A stretch of DNA of 63,673 nt, counting the filler, from Salisapilia sapeloensis CBS 127946 (taxonomy: Eukaryota; Protista; Oomycota): assembly GCA_023334545.1 (NCBI GenBank). It is 7 parts of 7 records of this genome, joined end to end, with 100 filler letters (N's around TTAATTAATTAA, not from the genome) between each part and the next. Parts side by side here need not be neighbours in the genome. Positions count along the whole stretch, not along the records: positions 45,756 to 54,422 come from JAADVB010000481.1; 6 more parts are not named here. One strand, given 5' to 3'. Under the pieces are notes generated by a model that ran no database searches, was not told the DNA's origin, and worked only from the letters and a program-made list of their open reading frames with translations. Shown piece by piece: positions 45,756 to 54,422 of the stretch (position 1 is its first letter; each line of letters begins with the position of its first letter). The translations under genes and the position numbers were made by a program.

Positions 45756-46179
45756 AGCATACTGCATTCGAATCACCTGCTACGCGCTGATGCCGAACGC
45801 GTGGGTGGCCATCCCGTTCGAGTTCCTCCACGGCATGACATTCGGTCTGTCATGGGCGGCCATCATCCAGTACATGTACAAGCGTGCTCCGGTTGGAGCC
45901 GAAGCTACTTTATTAGGAATGACGAATGGTGTCCAAAACGGTCTCGGACGCGCGCTCGGCACACTCCTTGGAGGCTACTTATACGAGAATTATGGTCCGC
46001 GAGTGATGTGGGGAGTCACGGATCTATTTGTTCCATTGGCTTTGTGTACCATCACCCTCTTCGCCTACCTGAAAAAAGATGACAGCACGAAAGAAAATGC
46101 AACATTGGAAGAAGAGGTCGAGTTGTTGTCACCAGTAAATGCAAATGCGTCGGAAGGTGCCTACGGCACTGATGAGTAG
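45756..46179 (+). CDS. MFS transporter (MFS_1-like/MFSD6 type), C-terminal part, copy 1
   Basis: EFLHGMTFGLSWAA...GLGRALGTLLGGYLY; 5' part lost in the gap. Confidence 0.85.
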
Positions 46180-46282
46180 TGTAGCTTGTGCGTAATAGAA
46201 GTCTTTGCCAGTACTTAGTGGATCTATTCCAAGTTACTTCTTGGACACAGCTTTGATCAAATAGCATCGAAAATTAATAACG

Positions 46283-49200
46283 TCACTCAGGAAGCACTTT
46301 GTATTTAGAAGTTTTTGGAGATAGCGGAGACAAATGTCGTCGCTGCGTTCGCTTTTCACAGAGATTTACTCCTTGAACGCTATTGCTGTGTGGTTCCGTA
46401 TCCAAATTAGACAAGCTTTCTTCCTTTTGCCTCCTCTCTGGTTTGAAGCCGTCAATCTCTTGTCGCTTGTCACGCTTCCTCTTCTTTTTGCAGTGATGAT
46501 GCGGCTGAGAATGACTATCATGCTTACATTGATGGTGTCTGCAGTGTCTTCTAGAAACCTTATCCGACGATACTTGCTCCGTGTCCGTTTGCACTTCTTG
46601 ATCGACCATTTTCTTTTCCAGTTGATCAGCAACACCATTATCTTCGGTACCAACAGCCTCGTCCTTTTGATGTATATCCTTTGAAGCACCTAGAAGCGTG
46701 CCTTGGATTGGAGCATCACCGTCCGGAGCGTTGTCATCGGTACTCACGCCTCCCTCTATCTTTTCCTGCACATCATCCGAAGTCGTCGTCTTTCGTTCTA
46801 GCTTTCGTTCCCACATTTGAATTCGTCTGGCATTTGCCAACAGTTTCCGATGCATCCGTCTGCGGTGGATGTATCCTCTTACGACTGACTCCACCAGCAT
46901 CGACGCCACTTTTGCTCGATTCACAAAGATTTGTTTAACACGGTCCCTTTGCTGCTCATAAGGTAAGCTGCGGATACCCAGCCGATGGATGCAGAGTATT
47001 CGAAGTAGCTCATTAAAGAACGGTCGTGTTGGACGAGCGGATGCAGCGTCGTTAAAGTACTGAGCCTGGATTTGAGCTCTCAGCTCCAAAAAGGCTGTCC
47101 GATCATGTCGACGATTGACGCGGAGGCTTGGAGGCAGCTCTTCTAGGAAATTCCCAAATTGCCAGAGTGGGAAAATGTTCTGGTTGTGGATGTCAAAGTG
47201 CTGGAAAACGACACGGTAGGCCTCAAAGTCCTGCAAAGACACGGCGGATCGATCACTGTTCAGATAGCACGTACGAAAATTCTCTAACACCACAGCGATA
47301 AATAGATTGAGGAAGATGAACACCACTAGAAGCACATAAGTGACGAAAAAGACCACCGAACCAGCGCTTGAGCCACAATCCGACGCATCCCCGCTCTTAG
47401 AGACGCAAAATGGTGGCGAAACCATACAATCGGTCATCGTCAAGTGCCAGTCGTCGCCAGCCATGATCTGAAAAAGCAGTTGGAACGAGGAGCCAAACGT
47501 ACGAAAGTTGGAGAATCGAGACAGAGCTTTACCTTCCCGTACGCCTCCGAAGAGCTGTCTCCCGATCACGGCAAAAACAAAGCAGATGAGAAACATGAGA
47601 AAGAATATGTGTCCAAGAGGCCGTAAAGAGGCGTAGAACGTCTGAAAGACCGTCCGTACGCCCTGGTTGAGACGTACAAATCGGAGTACGCGCATCATTC
47701 GAAAGACTCTTCCAGCCTGGATAATTGCTCGATAGTTTGTCGACGATACGTACGCAGACAACGAGCCAGCTAGAATCACGAGCTCAAACGCTCCTGCTTT
47801 TGAAAGGATGTAATGGTGCCTCAGAGCTAGACACTTGATCATCGCTTCGATGGTGAAGACGACTAGAAACAGCACCTCAATGATTTTAAAGGAAGTAGAG
47901 GTAGCAGAGCCTGAATCCGGATTGAGCAGCAGCATAGCAATGTTAAGTAAGATGGCGACGGAAATTGTAACATCGAACGACGGTCGCTGTGTCAGATCAA
48001 AGAGAGCTCCACAAATACGGTCTTTCGGTCGTGGAACCCGCTTCAGTGGTTGTAGCAAAAGCACAATCTTCTCCAAGTCGACCCAAATCTTCTGACTTTC
48101 GGTGAGCATTTGTGTGCCGTTGTTACGCTGAAATTGCTCCACTAGCACACCTACGAATAACCGAATCACAAAGAGTGCTCCGATGTACACGAAGAGAATA
48201 AAGAAGACGGCATAGTATGATGAATAGTTTAGAACGGGCTGCATGTCTGGGGTTGACGGAATGTCCATCGCAGCATGCGTTTTGTCAAGCCACTTGAGCG
48301 AAGTGAGTTCGAGCAACGCGATGAAGGCTGCAGGAATATGATCAAATGAGAATCTCGCATTGGACCACACGCGAGGTATCAATAAGCCACCGCCTTCCAT
48401 GCCATTAATCTCCCACCTGCCATCGGGAAACTGAACAAAAAACCCAACGCACTCGGATTCGTATGCTACGGAGTTGTCGTTGCAAGAGTAGAATCTTTCA
48501 GCAAACATACTCCGTCCTACGACGCCGAAAATGATGTAGACGATGGAGCAAAGCGCGAAAACATTTCCGACCTGAGGCAGAGACTGGGCCACCGCACTAA
48601 GAATGACTTTCATCTCGTGATTGTGATTCAGCAGCCGTAGCGGGCGTAGTACTCGGCCAGCTCGGAATAGCCCTGTGATAGACGTTTGCGCGTCGAGTTG
48701 TTCCATAATCTCATCCACGATTGCGATAATGAGCAAAACAAAGTCCAGTTGGTTCCACTTGTCTTCCAAATACTCCTGTTTGTCAACATAGGAAAGACGG
48801 TCGTCATAATGGAAGATCATGACCCGCAGATAATCGAGCCCAAAGCCATTAGCACTCACCTTGATCACAAACTCAAGAAACACTGTTGCCAAAACGAACC
48901 GATTAGCAATGTTTAAGGCATAGATCGTCGACTCGGACGGCGGAAAGGAGCTCATGTCCGGATGTGGGTCTTCCAACACGAGCGTGCAGCAGCTCACGAG
49001 AATAGCAAGCTGGACGAATCTTGAGAACCAGACTTTCATCGTAACCTGTCGGCATCTGAATCTCCACTTTAACCATATCAGTTGGAAGTATTCCAACGGT
49101 GTGGAAACAGATAGCTGGGCCAAATCTTCCGACGTTATAATTCGCTTAGAGCTTGTGGAATTGAAGAATCTGGCTTTGTCTAGTTGCTGCTCTAGCCCGA

Positions 49201-51913
49201 GAAACATACGCAGCTTGATATTGCCGACATTATCGATTTTATCGAGCTCCCCAAATGCCCGTACCCCGTTCTCACCAACCTGCTCAAAGATGTTCAGCTC
49301 CTTCGGCACGGCTATAATTTGTTCAAGCTGTAGTTGATACGCCTCCTCTTCCGATAGTGCAAAGTTCTCGAGAATGACGGCGATGAACAGGTTGAACAGA
49401 ACGTGCTGACCAATGATAAAGACAACAATCAGAAACGGGACGAGCAAGTAGTTTGGGTTCGCCGCGTCTACGGCATCGTACGTGATGCTCGACCACTGAT
49501 CGGCCGTGATCACTTGAAGTAAGGTAAGAAAGGAGTCTCCGAACGTTGAGAATCCCCATCGTGGTGTCAGTCCGTCCGAACCAGTCAAGTGATCTTGTCC
49601 ACCAAAGAGCTGCATGGCAATGAGACTGCTGACGAATTGGAAAAGCAGCATGAATACCACAACATCGATCACACCTCTTGAAGACTTTACGACCGACTCG
49701 ATCAGCTTCCTCGTGCCATCCCACATGAGCATGAGTCTCCCCACACGAAGCGTTCGCAATGTGGAAATACTGTTCAGACCTTCAAAAGATGCTGCTTCGG
49801 TGTTTTTAAAAACCAAACTCACAAGTGAGCCACAGACAACGATAAAGTCGAAAGCTCTCTCTGTGCTCTTTAGGTACGTCCCCAAGCCTCGAAGCGCAAT
49901 GATTCGGAGCACCAACTCGATCGTAAAAATGGTCGTGAACGCATACTCGGTAATGTCGAGCACCAGTGCCAAGGTGGAGCTCATGCCTGGATACTCTATC
50001 AAGAGAAAAAGTGTATTCACGACAATCGCCGCTGTAATTGAGTTATCGAATTCGCGAGAGAAGACAAACGTTTGGATAGTCTCAAGCCACATCGGAACAT
50101 GCTCTTCTTTCTCTTCAGGAGCGGCGTCAGCAGTTAGCGCAGCCCCTACTTTCATCCGAAGGGTAGGTGCGCTGCGTACAGTCGGCAAAGAAATAGACTT
50201 CTTACCAGTAGTTTCGCCGCTATTTGATAGCTGGAGCAGTGCTTCGGCACTAGAACGATTCATCTTTTTAAAATTGTTGTCGATCAGCATGTCTAACTGC
50301 TTTCCCTTCAGTAATTCCATCGTTGCGTCTACTGTCAAATTACGATAGTTGGACCACTGATGGGCTTGCACCATCAGTTTGGAATAGGCCACTGCATCGA
50401 GCGATCCTCTGTTTCCCTGCTCTTTTTCATTAACGCCTTCCACAGCAGTTTCCCCACCACCAGTATCATCCGAAGGCAAGGGAATGCATTTTCGGTTTGT
50501 ATGCCGTACCATTTCCATAGACTCTTCAATCGCCAAGGTCGCTCCCATAATCAAATTCACGCGTGCTTCTTCTTGCTCCGGCGACATTTTTTTCATATAA
50601 ATTGAATTGTCTGCTGCATACATGCTTTTCACAGACGATTCTCGTTCGCTGGCGTCGTCAAACTCATCGATGCCCTCTGCTGCTTCGGCAGTTAGTGCTT
50701 CACTAAAAGACTCGTCGATCTCCGACCTCGCACCGTCACTCGCGAACGTCATGAAGGACGTGGTGATGACTGCTACGAAGAGATTAACCACTAGAAAGAC
50801 CAAGGTTGCAATGATGGCAGCGTAATAGAGCACACTCCACTCTCCGGTTACTTGCACGACAGGGGCCATGATATCTCCAACCCATCCATCCTGCGAGACG
50901 ACCAAAAACACCAAGTACATGGCCGATAGTCCCGAATCAAAATTGACGTTCGCTGACGGTGGTCCTAGAAGTGCACACATCTGTCCAGCAGAATCGCATG
51001 TGTCCTTCGTGGCACAAAACTTTCGTGGCACGGCAGTTAAGAACGTACTATAGTCTCCGCCCGTATCGATGGATGCATTGACAACGCACTGCCTGTCGTA
51101 GACTCCACTAAAAGCCTCGAATCCAAAGATGGAGAACCCCATCAAGAAGAACAGAGACAAAGTTGCTACGTTGGCTAGAAATGGAATAGCCTGGACTAGC
51201 GACTTGAAAATGCGTCGCAAACCGGACGACATGGTGAGGCATCGGACGGTTTTTAACCCTCTGAGAAATCGCCAGTTAGGACCACCAAGATGCGAAAATA
51301 TACCAGCTACTACGATCAAGGGATGGATAATTCGATGCTTTCTGTGAAAGTACGCTCGCCGTGATCCGTACACACCATGCGCGACACATTTAGTGACCAT
51401 CTCGGTTAATAAAAATATTGAGCAAACGATGTCTAGAACGGATACAATGGTTTCTCGATGCTGGCTATCGTAGTCACTGGCGAGAGCTGCCAAATCCACA
51501 AGGATGATTATAAACAACATTCTATGAAACCAAGTAGACCGGAGGAGACCCCTCGCTTTCATTCTTAAGTGCTTCAGCCACTCTGGGTCGGAGGAAGCTG
51601 TCGACGTTGCGTTACCTGATCCTCTCCTCTCTTTCCGCTTAAATAGTTCAGATCCAGACTTGATGCTGAAAGCGGACGACGGCGTAGAAGAGGTGGTAAC
51701 GCTGCGGCGGCTGTATGACTGTGGCTGATTAAGATATTTGGAGCCGAATCGGCGCAGACGCTCGAGTTCAGCATGCGTCATGAGCGACTCGCACGCATCT
51801 GGATTAGTCAAGAGATACGATGTCCGCTTTACGAGTGCCCTGTCCTGAGTGGATATCCTCCTCGCCAAATGCCGCCGATGTGCTCGCTCCGTCGATGATC
51901 CATGCACAGACAT
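46283..51913 (-). CDS. Four-domain cation channel alpha subunit, NALCN/Cch1-like
   Basis: 1876-aa single ORF with four 6-TM repeats, S4 Arg arrays, pore loops SQDGW, TADQW, SLKW and AGDDW, and an IQ-like LVESVVRGYIHRRR motif. Confidence 0.9.
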   Translation of the reverse strand: MSVHGSSTERAHRRHLARRISTQDRALVKRTSYLLTNPDACESLMTHAELERLRRFGSKYLNQPQSYSRRSVTTSSTPSSAFSIKSGSELFKRKERRGSGNATSTASSDPEWLKHLRMKARGLLRSTWFHRMLFIIILVDLAALASDYDSQHRETIVSVLDIVCSIFLLTEMVTKCVAHGVYGSRRAYFHRKHRIIHPLIVVAGIFSHLGGPNWRFLRGLKTVRCLTMSSGLRRIFKSLVQAIPFLANVATLSLFFLMGFSIFGFEAFSGVYDRQCVVNASIDTGGDYSTFLTAVPRKFCATKDTCDSAGQMCALLGPPSANVNFDSGLSAMYLVFLVVSQDGWVGDIMAPVVQVTGEWSVLYYAAIIATLVFLVVNLFVAVITTSFMTFASDGARSEIDESFSEALTAEAAEGIDEFDDASERESSVKSMYAADNSIYMKKMSPEQEEARVNLIMGATLAIEESMEMVRHTNRKCIPLPSDDTGGGETAVEGVNEKEQGNRGSLDAVAYSKLMVQAHQWSNYRNLTVDATMELLKGKQLDMLIDNNFKKMNRSSAEALLQLSNSGETTGKKSISLPTVRSAPTLRMKVGAALTADAAPEEKEEHVPMWLETIQTFVFSREFDNSITAAIVVNTLFLLIEYPGMSSTLALVLDITEYAFTTIFTIELVLRIIALRGLGTYLKSTERAFDFIVVCGSLVSLVFKNTEAASFEGLNSISTLRTLRVGRLMLMWDGTRKLIESVVKSSRGVIDVVVFMLLFQFVSSLIAMQLFGGQDHLTGSDGLTPRWGFSTFGDSFLTLLQVITADQWSSITYDAVDAANPNYLLVPFLIVVFIIGQHVLFNLFIAVILENFALSEEEAYQLQLEQIIAVPKELNIFEQVGENGVRAFGELDKIDNVGNIKLRMFLGLEQQLDKARFFNSTSSKRIITSEDLAQLSVSTPLEYFQLIWLKWRFRCRQVTMKVWFSRFVQLAILVSCCTLVLEDPHPDMSSFPPSESTIYALNIANRFVLATVFLEFVIKVSANGFGLDYLRVMIFHYDDRLSYVDKQEYLEDKWNQLDFVLLIIAIVDEIMEQLDAQTSITGLFRAGRVLRPLRLLNHNHEMKVILSAVAQSLPQVGNVFALCSIVYIIFGVVGRSMFAERFYSCNDNSVAYESECVGFFVQFPDGRWEINGMEGGGLLIPRVWSNARFSFDHIPAAFIALLELTSLKWLDKTHAAMDIPSTPDMQPVLNYSSYYAVFFILFVYIGALFVIRLFVGVLVEQFQRNNGTQMLTESQKIWVDLEKIVLLLQPLKRVPRPKDRICGALFDLTQRPSFDVTISVAILLNIAMLLLNPDSGSATSTSFKIIEVLFLVVFTIEAMIKCLALRHHYILSKAGAFELVILAGSLSAYVSSTNYRAIIQAGRVFRMMRVLRFVRLNQGVRTVFQTFYASLRPLGHIFFLMFLICFVFAVIGRQLFGGVREGKALSRFSNFRTFGSSFQLLFQIMAGDDWHLTMTDCMVSPPFCVSKSGDASDCGSSAGSVVFFVTYVLLVVFIFLNLFIAVVLENFRTCYLNSDRSAVSLQDFEAYRVVFQHFDIHNQNIFPLWQFGNFLEELPPSLRVNRRHDRTAFLELRAQIQAQYFNDAASARPTRPFFNELLRILCIHRLGIRSLPYEQQRDRVKQIFVNRAKVASMLVESVVRGYIHRRRMHRKLLANARRIQMWERKLERKTTTSDDVQEKIEGGVSTDDNAPDGDAPIQGTLLGASKDIHQKDEAVGTEDNGVADQLEKKMVDQEVQTDTEQVSSDKVSRRHCRHHQCKHDSHSQPHHHCKKKRKRDKRQEIDGFKPERRQKEESLSNLDTEPHSNSVQGVNLCEKRTQRRHLSPLSPKTSKYKVLPE

Positions 51914-52103
51914 AATTTATGCAGAACCGATGCACAGGGGACTAGAGTGATATGGTGTGGCACAAAATGCAGAAGCGGCAGTTTCTTTAGACGGATCAAC
52001 GCTATGGCATTCTTTTCTTAGACCCGTGCTACCAGTAGGTAGAATCTGAAACGCCTGAGCTACGATTGTCCTAAGTCCATGACACGGATGGATGAAGAGT
52101 CGC

Positions 52104-53504
52104 TTAGGGAAGATCACATAGCTTCCCTTGGAGCACCATCGCTGCCTCGCCTTTGATGAATACACTGTCTGGCTTGTCCTCGTTCAGTTCCATAGCGACG
52201 AAGCCCCCCCGCTCAGGACACGCTTGCTGAGCGTACAACTCACTCTTGACTAAGATATCTGACCAGTATGTCGCCAGGGCACAGTGAGCACTTCCTGTGA
52301 CTGCATCTTCTCCGTCCCCGATTTGCGCTCGAAGGAAACGACTCTGGAAATCGACTTCTACTCCAGAGTGGATCGAGGCTTCCGAGGTGACACTGACTCC
52401 ACGACAATTAATGTTATCAATCAGAGTCCAATTCGGCTGAAGACGGTCGAATATGGTTGGTTCTACGTGCACTAGGATGTCATCGACCGACGTGGAAAAC
52501 ATGTTGACGATAGCATTGGGCGAAAGATTTAATGCACGAGCGATTTCATCCCTCGTGATACCTTCCTTTGGATCGGACAAAGTCCCCCGTGGGAAGTCCA
52601 TGCCGACCATATTCCGAGATGGATCGACTGTGGACGGCACAGAGGTGCACTGGAGCAAGCCGCTGAGAGTGTGAAAGTGGATGGGAAGATCACGAGGTGC
52701 ATGTCCAGCGTTGTACAACGCATAGGCAGAGGCCAAAGTCGCATGGCCACATATATCAACTTCTTTGTTTGGTTTGAACCAGCGCAGCTCATAGCTGGAT
52801 GCACCTTCTTTCTGATCATCACTCGGATAAATGAACGCTGTCTCACTCAAGTTGTTTTCGATCGCAACGCGTTGCATCCATTCGCTGGCGTTATCCCGTT
52901 TCGCAATTGCTTTGGGAAGAACGACAACCGCAGCAGGATTTCCCTCAAATGGCTGGGATGTAAACGCGTCTACCTGGTAGAATGGCAGTTTGCGGTATTC
53001 CGCACAGTCAAGCCACATCTCCATCCACGGATCCTGACCATGAGTCACAGGAGAAAGTCTCTTCACGCTGAAGCCACATTTGGTGTACAACTCTACCAAC
53101 TTCGCTTTGGAAAGCAGCACCATATTCTTCACAGTGGGCTGTGTCGCGCAGATATGCTCAATGTACTGCTTGACCATGGAGAGGGCAATCCCCTGGCGAC
53201 GACACTTAGGGCTGACCACCACGGAATGAATGCACAGGGTAGTGCCATTTTTATCATGTACGCTCATACTCTCTTCCTCCAATTCATCTTTCGAGGTCAA
53301 AGTTCCGTTCACAAATCCGACAATGTCTTCAGAGGACGATGCTGACGCAGGATACGCAGCTAGGAAAAAGTCTCGGGCGTTGTTATTTCGAAAGCGCACC
53401 TGCTCTTCACTTGCAGCTTCATCTGCGGGGTAGGAGGCAGTCTCCAGCTCCATCACGCGCTGCAGGAGGGCATTGCTGTGGATCAAAGTGAGGCGGAGCT
53501 GCAT
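52104..53504 (-). CDS. Fusion: AANAT/PAA1-like GNAT acetyltransferase + PhzF family isomerase/epimerase
   Basis: ETASYPADEAAS...IHSVVVSPKCRRQGIA (GNAT), then QVDAFT..PFEGNPAAV, NLSETAF, EVDICGHATLA, EDAVTGSA (PhzF). An FPR-like AATTTGC about 50 nt upstream supports ATG 53504. Confidence 0.9.
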   Translation of the reverse strand: MQLRLTLIHSNALLQRVMELETASYPADEAASEEQVRFRNNNARDFFLAAYPASASSSEDIVGFVNGTLTSKDELEEESMSVHDKNGTTLCIHSVVVSPKCRRQGIALSMVKQYIEHICATQPTVKNMVLLSKAKLVELYTKCGFSVKRLSPVTHGQDPWMEMWLDCAEYRKLPFYQVDAFTSQPFEGNPAAVVVLPKAIAKRDNASEWMQRVAIENNLSETAFIYPSDDQKEGASSYELRWFKPNKEVDICGHATLASAYALYNAGHAPRDLPIHFHTLSGLLQCTSVPSTVDPSRNMVGMDFPRGTLSDPKEGITRDEIARALNLSPNAIVNMFSTSVDDILVHVEPTIFDRLQPNWTLIDNINCRGVSVTSEASIHSGVEVDFQSRFLRAQIGDGEDAVTGSAHCALATYWSDILVKSELYAQQACPERGGFVAMELNEDKPDSVFIKGEAAMVLQGKLCDLP

Positions 53505-53986
53505 GGTTCTTGTTTTATTGCGCCTCGGTTTCGATTGTCGAACGCTTTGACTTGCAAATTGTATGCAAATCTTCGAGGATGTCATTTGGTCTGATATTTC
53601 CTCCATACAGCCTTTTGACACATGTGCGAGATAGATACTTGAAAGGTGCTAATGTGGTCATTGCGCTCTCACTCGTACCGTCAACCTGCTTTGCAGTGCT
53701 ATGCTTCTCTAATGAAGTTCGGCCCAGCCAAAGGTGGAAGTGTTGGACAACAAAGGGAGACTTAGACACTACACTAGACTTGAGAGCAATGGAAACTTGG
53801 TCGGCTCTAGTCATCTTCGACGGCAATTTTAGCTTCTACCAATTCCATGTCGATTCATTTGTGCCAACTGCGTAAGGTAGATATTGTACCAACCGGCGAA
53901 AGACTTCATGCGTATGCTTCAGCGCACGCAAATTACCAGTACGGGCTCCATGTTCGAGCTTGATTGCAGCTCGATCATACCTGTAT

Positions 53987-54422
53987 CTACGACTCATCAC
54001 TGACAGTGCCGTATGAAGACTGTACGAAAGATCTAGTATCACTCGTGGGAGAAAGCAGCGTCCTATCTTCTTCTTTTGTAAGCACTTGACTATCATCCTT
54101 TTTGTCCATCCAAGAGAAAACAATTATGGTACAAAAAGCCAATGGAACAAATAGATCCGTGACTCCCCACATCACTCGCGGACCATAGTTCTCGTATAAG
54201 TAGCCTCCAAAGAGTGAACCGAGCGCGCGTCCGAGACCGTTTTGTATGCCATCCATCAGTCCCAGTAGAGTCGCTTCGGTACCAACCGGAGCACGCTTGT
54301 ACATGTACTGGATGATGGCCGCCCATGACAGACCGAATGTCATGCCGTGGAGGAACTCGAACGGGATGGCCACCCACGCGTTCGGCATCAGCGCGTAGCA
54401 GGTGATTCGAATGCAGTATGCT
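53987..54422 (-). CDS. MFS transporter, C-terminal part, copy 2 (inverted relative to copy 1)
   Basis: First 141 nt identical to 45756-45896, then diverged paralogous sequence. Confidence 0.85.

What the first reader, a model, noticed from the sequence alone, without database searches (positions are those of the whole stretch)
46283..51913. NALCN/Cch1-type four-domain channel with an unusual D/D/K/D selectivity filter
Seen: pore motifs SQDGW (about 50890), TADQW (about 49500), ELTSLKWLD (about 48300) and AGDDW (about 47455). Recalled NALCN loops are SQEGW, TQEGW, SLKGW and TGEDW (E/E/K/E). The III-IV linker LTESQKIWVDLEKIVLLLQPLKRVPRP resembles NALCN LTVDQRRWEDLK...AQPLHLPPRP, and the C-terminal ENF...SLQD...RSLPYEQ region also looks NALCN-like rather than Cav/Nav-like. 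The S4 of domain II has only three Arg. Inference: a member of the leak-channel clade best known from animals and fungi. All three Glu positions are Asp, and domain III lacks the Gly after the Lys, which could change ion selectivity. It is encoded as a single 5.6-kb exon in an intron-rich neighbourhood.
Basis: partly seen in the sequence, partly recalled or inferred. Interest (0 to 1): 0.72.

Follow-up and report, generated by a model that had tools for sequence, protein, structure and literature searches.

The report
Oomycete four-domain channel, D/D/K/D pore
This is an intact gene for a four-domain cation channel whose lysine-containing D/D/K/D pore is real and conserved across oomycetes. 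The pore type was already described in 2018, and the channel is a distant cousin of the animal NALCN and fungal Cch1 channels, not a member of that family.

Summary
A 1876-aa uninterrupted ORF (46283..51913, minus strand) encodes four Ion_trans repeats. The pore motifs are SQDGW, TADQW, TSLKW and AGDDW, at the stated places. The missing Gly after the domain III Lys is not an error: contigs from an independent study are identical there, and all 33 oomycete relatives that cover the region also lack it.

The D/D/K/D filter is not new. Pozdnyakov et al. 2018 described "D/D/K/D(G)" in this same oomycete clade and noted its likeness to NALCN's E/E/K/E. A 2018 review also lists DDKD.

The NALCN/Cch1 reading is partly right:
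- **For:** my tree and the published 2025 tree both put the clade on the Cch1/NALCN side of a strongly supported split from all Nav, Cav1/2 and Cav3. Grouping with Nav is rejected (AU p = 2.7e-5).
- **Against:** it lies outside NALCN/Cch1 proper, among weakly resolved cryptist, green-algal and other protist lineages. All four S4 segments keep 3-5 regularly spaced basic residues. The III-IV linker scores higher against Nav than against NALCN.

I therefore read it as a probably voltage-gated channel, possibly Na+-permeable, and not as a leak channel. Function is untested. It is a new member of a known kind, of modest interest.

The parts
46283..51913 (-). Complete coding sequence of the channel alpha subunit (1876 aa plus stop)
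   Evidence: ORF list and translation. Four Ion_trans stretches, E = 2.9e-156. Aligns end to end with oomycete orthologs at 51-53% identity.
50744..51532 (-). Domain I, S1 to S6 (residues about 128-390). S4 is NWRFLRGLKTVRCL at 51236-51277 (R, R, K, R every third residue). The S3 position that normally holds Asp is His/Pro (HRIIHPLIVV).
   Evidence: Motif positions; alignment with Andalucia WNVLDFTVVV.
50879..50902 (-). Domain I pore loop VVSQDGWV; filter Asp342
   Evidence: Asp is conserved in all oomycete relatives that hold the region.
49358..50050 (-). Domain II, S1 to S6 (residues 622-852). S4 is STLRTLRVGRLMLMW at 49721-49765, with three Arg.
   Evidence: Best Pfam stretch 622-857.
49490..49513 (-). 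Domain II pore loop VITADQWS; filter Asp805
48119..49030 (-). Domain III, S1 to S6 (residues 962-1265). S4 is GLFRAGRVLRPLRLLNH at 48623-48673, with four Arg.
   Evidence: PDB alignments.
48284..48310 (-). Domain III pore loop ELTSLKWLD, one residue shorter than usual. Lys1207 (codon 48293-48295) lies directly before the pore Trp.
   Evidence: Independent contigs are identical here.
48026..48118 (-). III-IV linker core GTQMLTESQKIWVDLEKIVLLLQPLKRVPRP. In the alignment, M-L lies under the F-M of the Nav IFM latch.
   Evidence: PDB search with alignment: Nav 72.9 bits, NALCN 60.9, Cav3 43, Cav1 28.
47273..47977 (-). Domain IV, S1 to S6 (residues 1313-1547). S4 is AGRVFRMMRVLRFVRLNQGVR at 47654-47716, with five Arg at every third position.
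47444..47467 (-). Domain IV pore loop IMAGDDWH; filter Asp1487 and Asp1488 at the next position
   Evidence: GDDW in 31 relatives; GG[ED]W in 4 saprolegnian ones.
46814..47275 (-). Conserved C-terminal domain (residues 1547-1700). It holds an EF-hand-like stretch (SLQDFEAYRVVFQHFD..., 47192-47239), the invariant FFNELLR...RSLPYEQQRDRVKQIF block (46925-47020), and a basic VVRGYIHRRRMHRKLL helix (46838-46885).
   Evidence: Alignment A3. Profile versus PDB: EF-hand proteins about 1e-5, NALCN 4.7e-4, Nav 0.013 or worse. The distal part alone gives no hit.
47468..47532 (-). Optional 65-nt GT-AG intron inside the ORF (GAAG|GTAAAG ... TTTTTCAG|ATC). Removing it shifts the frame just before the domain IV filter and gives a stop at codon 1484.
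   Evidence: Joint in contigs of runs X4 and X5; the unspliced form is also present. Sequence; translation.
50146..50205 (-). Optional 60-nt GT-AG intron in the I-II linker. It is in frame and removes 20 residues (KKSISLPTVRSAPTLRMKVG).
   Evidence: Joint in one contig of run X4. Sequence; translation.

Best explanation
**What it is.** The gene encodes the pore-forming subunit of a four-domain (4 x 6 TM) cation channel. It is the ortholog, in an oomycete that branches below the Phytophthora-Pythium split, of the oomycete-wide clade that Pozdnyakov et al. 2018 called WSC VI.

**Shown**
- The pore ring is Asp/Asp/Lys/Asp, with a further Asp next to the domain IV position. The domain III loop is one residue short.
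- This pattern is fixed across Peronosporales, Pythiales and, with Gly in domain IV, Saprolegniales.
- The clade belongs to the large assemblage of four-domain channels that also holds fungal Cch1, animal NALCN and their apusomonad and CRuMs relatives. It is separate from Nav, Cav1/2 and Cav3.
- It is not a NALCN/Cch1 ortholog. Its published nearest neighbours are cryptist channels.

**Inferred mechanism**
- All four S4 helices keep 3-5 basic residues at every third position, so opening is probably voltage dependent, unlike Cch1.
- The domain III Lys among three carboxylates (net charge -2, as in E/E/K/E NALCN and close to D/E/K/A Nav) should lower Ca2+ affinity and let Na+ or other monovalent cations pass. 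Block or modulation by external Ca2+ is possible.
- The short III-IV linker keeps a hydrophobic pair at the place of the Nav inactivation latch.
- The C-terminal domain keeps an EF-hand-like fold and a basic helix. Inactivation and calmodulin-type regulation are therefore plausible.

No member of the clade has been recorded electrophysiologically in the papers I read.
For: **Family and fold**
- Four Ion_trans stretches.
- PDB hits to Nav and Cav at E about 1e-109.

**Orthology**
- 59-62% identity over the core to Phytophthora, Pythium, Plasmopara, Globisporangium and Nothophytophthora proteins; 38-40% to Saprolegniales.
- The S4 sequences printed for Phytoi3, Phytop4 and Saprod4 in the 2018 supplement match these orthologs.
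- The text of PMC5824947 gives D/D/K/D(G) for that clade.
- Filter survey of 42 relatives.

**Placement**
- IQ-TREE, LG+C20+F+G4, 53 rows x 1184 columns. A split with SH-aLRT 100 and length 0.35 separates 28 rows (all Nav, Cav1/2, Cav3) from 25 rows: the window clade, Thecamonas XP_013757622.1, Rigifila, two fungal Cch1, Mesostigma and others.
- FastTree on 163 rows gives the same 26-row clade at 100.
- AU test rejects window clade + Nav (dlnL 107, p = 2.7e-5).
- In JGP 2025 Data S20, Plasmopara XP_024576343.1 + S. diclina XP_008603782.1 sit next to Palpitomonas (95.3/94.2/1), inside the node that also holds NALCN/Cch1 (76.2/77.6/0.999; with Discoba 92.6/88.5/1).

**Other**
- S4 charges and motif places.
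- III-IV linker alignment.
- C-terminal profile search.
- Contigs from a second study cover most of the gene and carry GT-AG joints. This suggests it is transcribed.
Against: - Function is wholly inferred.
- The register of Lys1207 is ambiguous. HMMER puts it under the Nav DEKA Lys with the gap at Gly, but against Cav3.1 it puts the gap at the filter position and Lys one place later. If the second register is right, the ring would be D/D/-/D with a Lys just above it.
- Domain I lacks the usual S3 Asp, so not every voltage sensor need be functional.
- The trees are unrooted. The 'Cch1 side' is a clade only if the root lies outside it.
- Nodes inside that side are weak (61-87; 9-80 in the published tree).
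- No metazoan NALCN sequence could be brought into my own tree.
- By raw score Nav (370 bits) and Cav (363) exceed NALCN (260). I attribute this to NALCN's long stem branch (1.0 in Data S20).
- The runs taken as RNA are only guessed to be RNA.
Confidence: 0.75

Rival explanations
1. It is the true oomycete counterpart of Cch1/NALCN: direct sister of that family, working as a largely voltage-independent influx or leak channel together with the oomycete Mid1 homolog.
For: - The AU test does not reject the window clade plus Thecamonas, Rigifila and two fungal Cch1 as one clade (dlnL 11, p = 0.295).
- The C-terminal profile hits NALCN best among channels.
- Oomycetes have a Mid1 homolog with a developmental and virulence phenotype but 'no CCH1 homolog' was reported (PMC5395580).
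- In the 2025 tree, a neighbouring cryptist clade (not the one nearest the oomycete pair) holds the channels that those authors co-folded with cryptist Mid1.
- UniRef automatically names the orthologs CCH1.
Against: - Neither my best tree nor the published one makes it sister to NALCN/Cch1.
- All four S4 segments are charge-rich, whereas arginine/lysine-poor S4 segments are the stated hallmark of NALCN and Cch (PMC5824947).
- The 2025 HMM survey, which included Saprolegnia, Plasmopara and Phytopythium, reported FAM155/Mid1 only in animals, fungi, apusomonads and cryptists.
- No Mid1, UNC79 or UNC80 sequence could be examined here.
Confidence: 0.2
2. Same family placement, but the pore is Ca2+-selective or non-selective. 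Because the domain III loop is one residue short, Lys1207 sits one position above the ring and the effective ring is three Asp.
For: - The Cav3.1 alignment places the gap at the filter position and Lys under Gly.
- A gapless reading backwards from the Trp keeps the usual Thr two residues before the filter position (T-S-L-K-W). This is read directly from the sequence.
- Dihydropyridines and other Ca2+-channel blockers affect oomycete Ca2+ signalling (PMC4820453). This evidence is not specific to this gene.
Against: - Anchoring on the P1 helix (FD...LLE/LLQ) puts Lys under the Nav Lys.
- The 2018 authors score the filter as D/D/K/D.
- The Lys is invariant across oomycetes and is also present in Mesostigma with the same short loop, which argues for a role in the pore.
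Confidence: 0.25
3. It is a diverged relative of Nav or Cav that acquired a domain III Lys independently, and the Cch1-side placement is a long-branch artefact.
For: - The highest pairwise scores are to Nav and Cav.
- The III-IV linker is most Nav-like.
- The domain III Lys is shared with Nav.
Against: - A split of SH-aLRT 100 under a mixture model, the same clade at 100 in FastTree, and the independent published tree.
- AU rejection of Nav grouping.
- No Nav- or Cav-specific Pfam domains (Na_trans_assoc, IQ_SCN5A_C, GPHH, Ca_chan_IQ).
- According to PMC5824947, the Nav-like linker is an ancestral feature of four-domain channels.
Confidence: 0.04
4. The ORF is a pseudogene or an assembly artefact.
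For: Some contigs show a frame-shifting 65-nt splice inside domain IV.
Against: - 5.6 kb without a stop.
- Full-length conservation with orthologs, including hundreds of invariant positions.
- Identical sequence in runs of a second study.
- The unspliced form is present in the same data.
Confidence: 0.01

Closest known systems
Oomycete clade 'WSC VI' of four-domain channels (Pozdnyakov et al. 2018, PMC5824947), e.g. P. infestans XP_002897879.1, P. parasitica XP_008902841.1, S. diclina XP_008603782.1
   Same: - Orthologous: the 6-row oomycete clade has support 100.
- The same D/D/K/D filter with Asp next to the domain IV position.
- The same short domain III loop, S4 signatures, III-IV linker and C-terminal block.
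   Different: - Only 51-53% identity overall, and the window protein branches below the Phytophthora-Pythium split.
- Domain II S4 lacks the extra Lys (RLMLMW versus RLMMKYEG).
- Small changes beside the filter (VVSQD for VVAQD, ELTSLKWL for EMTSLKWV/I).
- An acidic insert follows domain I S6.
Animal NALCN (E/E/K/E or E/K/E/E sodium leak channel)
   Same: - One Lys among three acidic ring residues, with an acidic residue next to the domain IV position (PMC5824947).
- The same side of the deep split (published tree).
- Best channel hit of the C-terminal profile.
   Different: - Asp instead of Glu.
- Domain III loop one residue shorter.
- S4 segments fully charged.
- Lower overall score than Nav and Cav (260 versus 370 bits).
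- Separated from NALCN by several nodes.
- Partners FAM155, UNC79 and UNC80 not examined.
[quoted passage not shown]
   Same: - The same side of the split in my tree, with two fungal Cch1 representatives.
- Sisterhood is not rejected.
- Oomycetes have a Mid1 homolog (PMC5395580).
   Different: - The fungal representatives in my alignment carry E/E/E/E.
- Cch1 S4 segments are described as charge-poor (PMC5824947).
- Not sister in either tree.
Animal Nav1 (D/E/K/A)
   Same: - Domain III Lys.
- III-IV linker MTEEQKK...PRP type with a hydrophobic latch position.
- Highest pairwise scores.
   Different: - Grouping rejected by AU test.
- Domain IV has Asp, not Ala.
- No Nav-specific Pfam domains.
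- No Gly after the Lys.
Mesostigma viride EP00899_P003365 (P0233) and cryptist channels (Guillardia 'WSC VIII', Palpitomonas)
   Same: - Mesostigma has D/D/K/D and the same STFKW short loop, and is the best non-oomycete hit (647 bits).
- Guillardia is reported with D/D/K/D(G).
- Palpitomonas is the published sister of the oomycete clade.
   Different: - In my tree Mesostigma pairs with Thecamonas (95), although one clade with the window group is not rejected (p = 0.218).
- The cryptist sequences were not among my retrieved proteins, so their filters rest on the paper.

Membership tests
Four-domain (4 x 6 TM) voltage-gated-like cation channel superfamily | Four tandem Ion_trans repeats, each with an S4 and a pore loop, and a short III-IV linker | tested here: met
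   - Pfam Ion_trans x4, E = 2.9e-156.
- PDB Nav, Cav and NALCN hits.
- Motif map.
Oomycete WSC VI clade (PMC5824947) | D/D/K/D(G) filter and the clade's S4 sequences; monophyly with Phytophthora and Saprolegnia members | tested here: met
   The clade has support 100.
'Clade A' of Senatore-lab tree (NALCN/Cch1 plus related protist channels; PMC12412391) | Falls on the NALCN/Cch1 side of the strongly supported split from the Cav1/2, Cav3 and Nav clades | tested here: met
   - Orthologs located in Data S20.
- Own tree: split at 100, with Thecamonas, Rigifila and fungal Cch1 as markers.
- AU test rejects Nav grouping.
- Caveat: the trees are unrooted.
NALCN/Cch1 proper | Placement within or directly sister to the animal NALCN + fungal Cch1 (+ apusomonad/CRuMs) clade | tested here: inconclusive
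   - Not sister or in Data S20.
- Holding them together costs only dlnL 11, AU p = 0.295.
- No metazoan NALCN in my tree.
NALCN/Cch1 proper | Arginine/lysine-poor S4 segments (criterion used in PMC5824947 for voltage-insensitive NALCN and Cch) | tested here: not met
   S4 basic residues at every third position: domain I 4, II 3, III 4, IV 5.
NALCN/Cch1 proper | Ring E/E/K/E, E/K/E/E or E/E/E/E (NALCN) | tested here: not met
   The ring is D/D/K/D, with the same charge pattern as E/E/K/E but different residues, and the domain III loop is shorter.
NALCN/Cch1 proper | Works with FAM155/Mid1 (and UNC79/UNC80 in animals, fungi and apusomonads) | not testable with these tools
   - Only an 8.7-kb piece of the genome is available, and no Mid1 sequence could be fetched.
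- The literature conflicts: a Mid1 homolog is reported in oomycetes (PMC5395580), but none in stramenopiles by the 2025 HMM survey (PMC12412391).
Nav (voltage-gated sodium channels) | D/E/K/A or D/K/E/A ring, IFM latch, Nav cytoplasmic domains, placement in the Nav clade | tested here: not met
   - The ring differs in domains II and IV.
- QML lies at the latch position.
- No Na_trans_assoc or IQ_SCN5A_C.
- AU p = 2.7e-5 against the grouping.
Cav1/2 and Cav3 | E/E/E/E or E/E/D/D ring, GPHH/Ca_chan_IQ domains (Cav1/2), placement in those clades | tested here: not met
   - Ring with Lys.
- No GPHH or Ca_chan_IQ.
- On the other side of the 100-support split.

The most novel reading that the evidence does not exclude
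The D/D/K/D ring with a one-residue-short domain III loop is an old, shared pore type of a protist lineage of Cch1/NALCN-related channels (oomycetes, cryptists, Mesostigma). In oomycetes this channel would be the missing pore partner of Mid1, while still being voltage-gated and Na+-permeable. That would make it a lysine-based Na+ pathway that arose outside animals.
Probability: 0.15. Interest if true: 0.65.

Novelty: new member of a known kind. Interest (0 to 1): 0.3.

Why it matters
- **Na+ permeation outside animals.** Lysine-containing rings are the known route to Na+ permeation in four-domain channels. According to the papers read here, they have been characterised only in animals. The oomycete D/D/K/D clade is a published but unrecorded candidate for a Na+-permeable channel outside animals.
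- **A candidate partner for Mid1.** Oomycetes include major crop and fish pathogens whose zoospore release, swimming and encystment depend on ion signalling. They have a Mid1 homolog with a developmental and virulence phenotype but no accepted Cch1 partner. This clade is the best-characterised oomycete candidate for that partner. At least two other oomycete lineages also lie in clade A.
- **What this window adds.**
  - A deep-branching ortholog showing that the filter and the short domain III loop are fixed across the group.
  - A Mesostigma protein with the same pore.
  - An explicit link between two published trees.
- **What it does not add.** A new kind of channel.

Tried and rejected
- **Fetching NALCN.** I tried a 994-aa query so that the length window would exclude full-length Nav and Cav. 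Cav2, Cav3 and Nav fragments still filled the list and no NALCN appeared. My tree therefore uses fungal Cch1, Thecamonas and Rigifila as markers of the NALCN/Cch1 group. These were identified only after the representative search.
- **C-terminal domain.** Searched as a single sequence, it gave no channel hit in the PDB. The distal RSLPYEQ block searched as a profile gave nothing at E up to 10. The 'NALCN-like RSLPYEQ' point is therefore not supported on its own.
- **Atlas search by features** was uninformative: oomycete, chlorophyte, haptophyte, NALCN, Cav2 and Nax clusters all scored 0.93-0.96.
I used FFT-NS-2 for the survey and L-INS-i on trimmed sequences for the tree.
- **Ranking by profile score** does not track clade. 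The top non-oomycete hits (Mesostigma, Andalucia, Rigifila, Diphylleia, Stygiella) come from different clades of the published tree.
- **No structure was predicted**, because the tool returns no coordinates, so the position of the Lys could not be measured.
- **No complex job was run**, because no oomycete Mid1 sequence was available by reference. Sequences printed in paper supplements were not typed into tools.
- **Organism.** The placement below the Phytophthora-Pythium split is all I can say.
Full report
**1. Observation**

The piece 45756-54422 holds one long ORF, 46283..51913 on the minus strand, of 1876 codons. Pfam finds four Ion_trans stretches (E = 2.9e-156). Against solved structures the protein matches Nav and Cav1 at E about 1e-109 (370 and 363 bits), Cav3 at about 295-307 bits and NALCN at about 260 bits.

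| Domain | Motif | Residues | Window coordinates |
|---|---|---|---|
| I | VVSQDGWV | 338-345 | 50879-50902 |
| II | VITADQWS | 801-808 | 49490-49513 |
| III | ELTSLKWLD | 1202-1210 | 48284-48310 |
| IV | IMAGDDWH | 1483-1490 | 47444-47467 |

Domain II S4 (STLRTLRVGRLMLMW) has three Arg. The quoted III-IV linker and C-terminal strings are present.

**2. Is the short domain III loop real?**

Between the conserved FD at the start of the pore helix and the pore Trp there are 16 residues here, against 17 in Andalucia in the alignment. By my recollection, Nav and Cav also have 17.

Three lines of evidence say this is not an error:
- Contigs of three runs from a second study lie on the gene, and no differing letters or indels are listed. 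The domain III loop is covered by 47692-48438 and 48188-48517; the second of these listed pieces carries one differing letter.
- In 42 oomycete relatives, every one of the 33 that contain the region has S[LV]KW with no Gly. One Achlya model has a 12-residue insert there, probably a gene-model artefact.
- A Mesostigma viride protein has the same STFKW.

The register remains ambiguous. HMMER aligns Lys1207 with the Lys of the Nav1.6 DEKA ring and puts the gap at Gly. Against Cav3.1 it puts the gap at the filter Asp and the Lys under Gly.

**3. The filter is already published**

Pozdnyakov et al. [quoted passage not shown] They also state that these channels carry D or E next to the domain IV position.

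Their supplementary S4 table for Phytoi3 (XP_002897879.1), Phytop4 (XP_008902841.1) and Saprod4 (XP_008603782.1) prints the same S4 sequences as my orthologs. The window protein is therefore a member of that clade.

My survey reproduces their "(G)": GDDW in 31 peronosporalean and pythialean proteins, GG[ED]W in 4 saprolegnian ones. Fux et al. [quoted passage not shown] 2010.

In the 2018 data set the three Albugo sequences shown had other S4 types. The window protein, which branches below the Phytophthora-Pythium split, extends the sampling.

**4. Where does it belong?**

*Similarity alone is misleading.* Nav and Cav outscore NALCN. The best non-oomycete hits of a family profile search over 1.84 billion representatives are Mesostigma, Andalucia, Rigifila, Diphylleia and Stygiella, which sit in different clades of the published tree.

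*The published tree.* The Newick file of Fig. 2A of the 2025 JGP paper (PMC12412391, Data S20) can be read directly.
- Plasmopara halstedii XP_024576343.1 and S. diclina XP_008603782.1 (the WSC VI member) form a pair (100/100/1).
- That pair is sister to Palpitomonas channels (95.3/94.2/1).
- These join a cryptist clade (80.4/75.8/0.977).
- They then join a green-algal and Rhodelphis clade (45.5/62.7/0.971).
- The whole is joined at 76.2/77.6/0.999 to a group made of three parts:
  - (Thecamonas, Rigifila) + (fungal Cch1 + animal NALCN);
  - a Stygiella-malawimonad pair;
  - a further cryptist clade.
- Discoba follows at 92.6/88.5/1.

This is the authors' "clade A", which they describe as strongly supported and distinct from the Cav1/2, Cav3 and Nav clades.

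*My own tree.* The representative search returned Thecamonas XP_013757622.1 (their apusomonad NALCN/Cch1 homolog), Rigifila P026090, and two fungal proteins of Cch1 size that cluster with them (Syncephalis, Calcarisporiella).
- The IQ-TREE tree (53 rows, 1184 columns, LG+C20+F+G4 by PMSF) has one split with SH-aLRT 100 and length 0.35.
  - One side (28 rows) holds all Nav, Cav1/2 and Cav3, with Andalucia, Stygiella P002857, Diphylleia P014058 and several algal channels.
  - The other side (25 rows) holds the window clade, a group with K or R in domain III, Mesostigma D/D/K/D, Thecamonas, Rigifila, the fungal Cch1 and Platysulcus.
- FastTree on 163 rows gives the same clade at 100.

AU tests:

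| Group held together | dlnL | p-AU | Result |
|---|---|---|---|
| Window clade + Nav | 107 | 2.7e-5 | rejected |
| Window clade + Thecamonas, Rigifila and fungal Cch1 | 11 | 0.295 | not rejected |
| Window clade + Mesostigma | 9.1 | 0.218 | not rejected |

The channel therefore belongs to the broad Cch1/NALCN-related assemblage. Neither tree makes it a NALCN/Cch1 ortholog.

Caveats: the trees are unrooted, inner nodes on that side are weak, and no metazoan NALCN sequence could be obtained.

**5.

- **III-IV linker.** It scores 72.9 bits against Nav, 60.9 against NALCN, 43 against Cav3 (S6 part only) and 28 against Cav1. It is Nav- and NALCN-like rather than Cav-like, and most like Nav. The alignment places M-L under the F-M of the IFM latch. 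Pozdnyakov et al. regard this type of linker as ancestral.
- **C-terminal domain.**
  - As a single sequence it finds nothing.
  - As a profile of nine oomycete sequences it finds EF-hand proteins (about 1e-5). Among channels it finds NALCN first (E = 4.7e-4, one stretch of 132 positions onto NALCN 1462-1589), with Nav only over the EF-hand part (E = 0.013-0.3).
  - The distal block with RSLPYEQ finds nothing alone.
  - The NALCN likeness of the tail is therefore a weak but measurable signal, and it does not reside in the quoted motif.

**6. Likely working**

*Shown:*
- four repeats;
- a ring with one Lys and three Asp, plus Asp1488;
- S4 helices with 4, 3, 4 and 5 basic residues at every third position;
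- a short III-IV linker with a hydrophobic pair;
- an EF-hand-like C-terminal fold followed by a basic helix;
- domain I lacks the usual S3 Asp.

*Inferred:*
- Gating is probably voltage dependent, by the charge criterion the 2018 paper uses to separate voltage-sensitive channels from NALCN and Cch.
- The Lys should disfavour high-affinity Ca2+ binding and allow Na+ or other monovalent flux, as in D/E/K/A and E/E/K/E pores.
- The shorter loop and the Asp for Glu changes could shift this in either direction.
- None of this has been measured for any member.

**7. Transcripts and surroundings**

Runs of a second study, guessed to be RNA, cover most of the gene unevenly. They carry two joints with GT..AG ends on the coding strand.
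- **47468-47532 (65 nt).** The splice sites are good (GAAG|GTAAAG ... TTTTTCAG|A). Removing it shifts the frame immediately before the domain IV filter and stops at codon 1484. The unspliced form is present as well and is the one that matches orthologs.
- **50146-50205 (60 nt).** It is in frame and lies in the variable I-II linker.

"Single exon" is thus true of the functional reading frame, but the transcript pool seems to include spliced variants.

Upstream lies a 505-aa GNAT acetyltransferase fused to a PhzF-like domain (52104-53621, minus strand). Both ends of the piece are a 327-nt inverted repeat (91%) encoding the C-terminal part of an MFS_1_like transporter.

**8. Verdict**

- The "unusual" filter is a published feature of this oomycete clade.
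- The gene is a new, deep-branching member of a known but functionally uncharacterised kind.
- The open questions are its ion selectivity, its gating and whether it partners with oomycete Mid1.

Noticed in passing
window 47468-47532 (minus strand): A 65-nt GT-AG intron with strong splice sites lies inside conserved coding sequence for the domain IV pore helix. Contigs of two runs show it removed, which would truncate the protein at codon 1484. The unspliced form is also present. The 5' site comes from the codons E-G-K, which Phytophthora orthologs do not share, so the intron looks lineage specific. It could be unproductive or regulated splicing.
   Followed up: partly
window 50146-50205 (minus strand): A 60-nt in-frame GT-AG intron in the I-II linker, seen removed in one contig of one run. 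It would delete 20 poorly conserved residues.
   Followed up: partly
window 46291: Contigs of two runs of the second study end at exactly 46291, eight bases before the end of the stop codon (46283-46285). This may be a branch point in the assembly graph (variant, polyadenylation or splice). Contigs cannot show transcript ends.
   Followed up: no
window 45756-46082 and 54096-54422: The two ends of the piece are a 327-nt inverted repeat (91% complementary). Each encodes the same C-terminal part of an MFS_1_like transporter (ORFs 45790-46179 plus strand and 53987-54388 minus strand). The channel and its neighbour therefore sit between inverted copies of a transporter gene.
   Followed up: partly
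window 52104-53621 (minus strand): The upstream ORF of 505 aa is a fusion of a GNAT acetyltransferase domain (about residues 54-186) and a PhzF-like domain (residues 217-499, E = 2.3e-53). A much deeper contig (depth about 60 against about 7) runs from beyond 51913 down to 51549, overlapping the first 365 bases of the channel ORF. This may be this neighbour's transcript tail.
   Followed up: partly
P0233 (Mesostigma viride EP00899_P003365, 2799 aa): A streptophyte alga has a four-domain channel with D/D/K/D (TLSLDGW, VLTGDNW, STFKW, ANGDQW) and the same one-residue-short domain III loop. It is the best non-oomycete hit of the family profile. In my tree it pairs with Thecamonas, but one clade with the oomycete group is not rejected.
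   Followed up: partly
P0252, P0283, P0255, P0268, P0352 (Durusdinium trenchii): This group of channels has Ala/Ser, Gly, Lys or Arg, and Glu/Asp at the four filter positions (e.g. ISARAGL, MFAGGGTW, VTGKGW, AGDDW). It is the nearest, weakly supported neighbour of the window clade in my tree. It recalls the A/G/K/E filters of the 2018 paper's WSC VII.
   Followed up: no
window 51296-51337 (domain I S3) and orthologs: The S3 Asp that is usual in voltage sensors (WNxLDF) is absent from domain I in the whole oomycete clade (HRIIHPL here, RFLQVSL in Phytophthora). Domains II-IV keep an acidic residue at that position.
   Followed up: no
P0032 (Achlya hypogyna) domain III loop: A 12-residue insert (TTHYSDATDVLQ) lies between the filter Lys and the pore Trp. 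It is absent from all other relatives and is probably an unremoved intron in that gene model.
   Followed up: no
JGP 2025 Data S20, part 9: Oomycetes have at least two further lineages inside the same broad clade. One is Phytopythium P008325 + Plasmopara XP_024586153.1 + S. diclina XP_008615525.1, grouped with Hondaea and Cafeteria. The other is the lone S. diclina XP_008607900.1. The D/D/K/D channel is therefore not the only Cch1-side channel of oomycetes.
   Followed up: no
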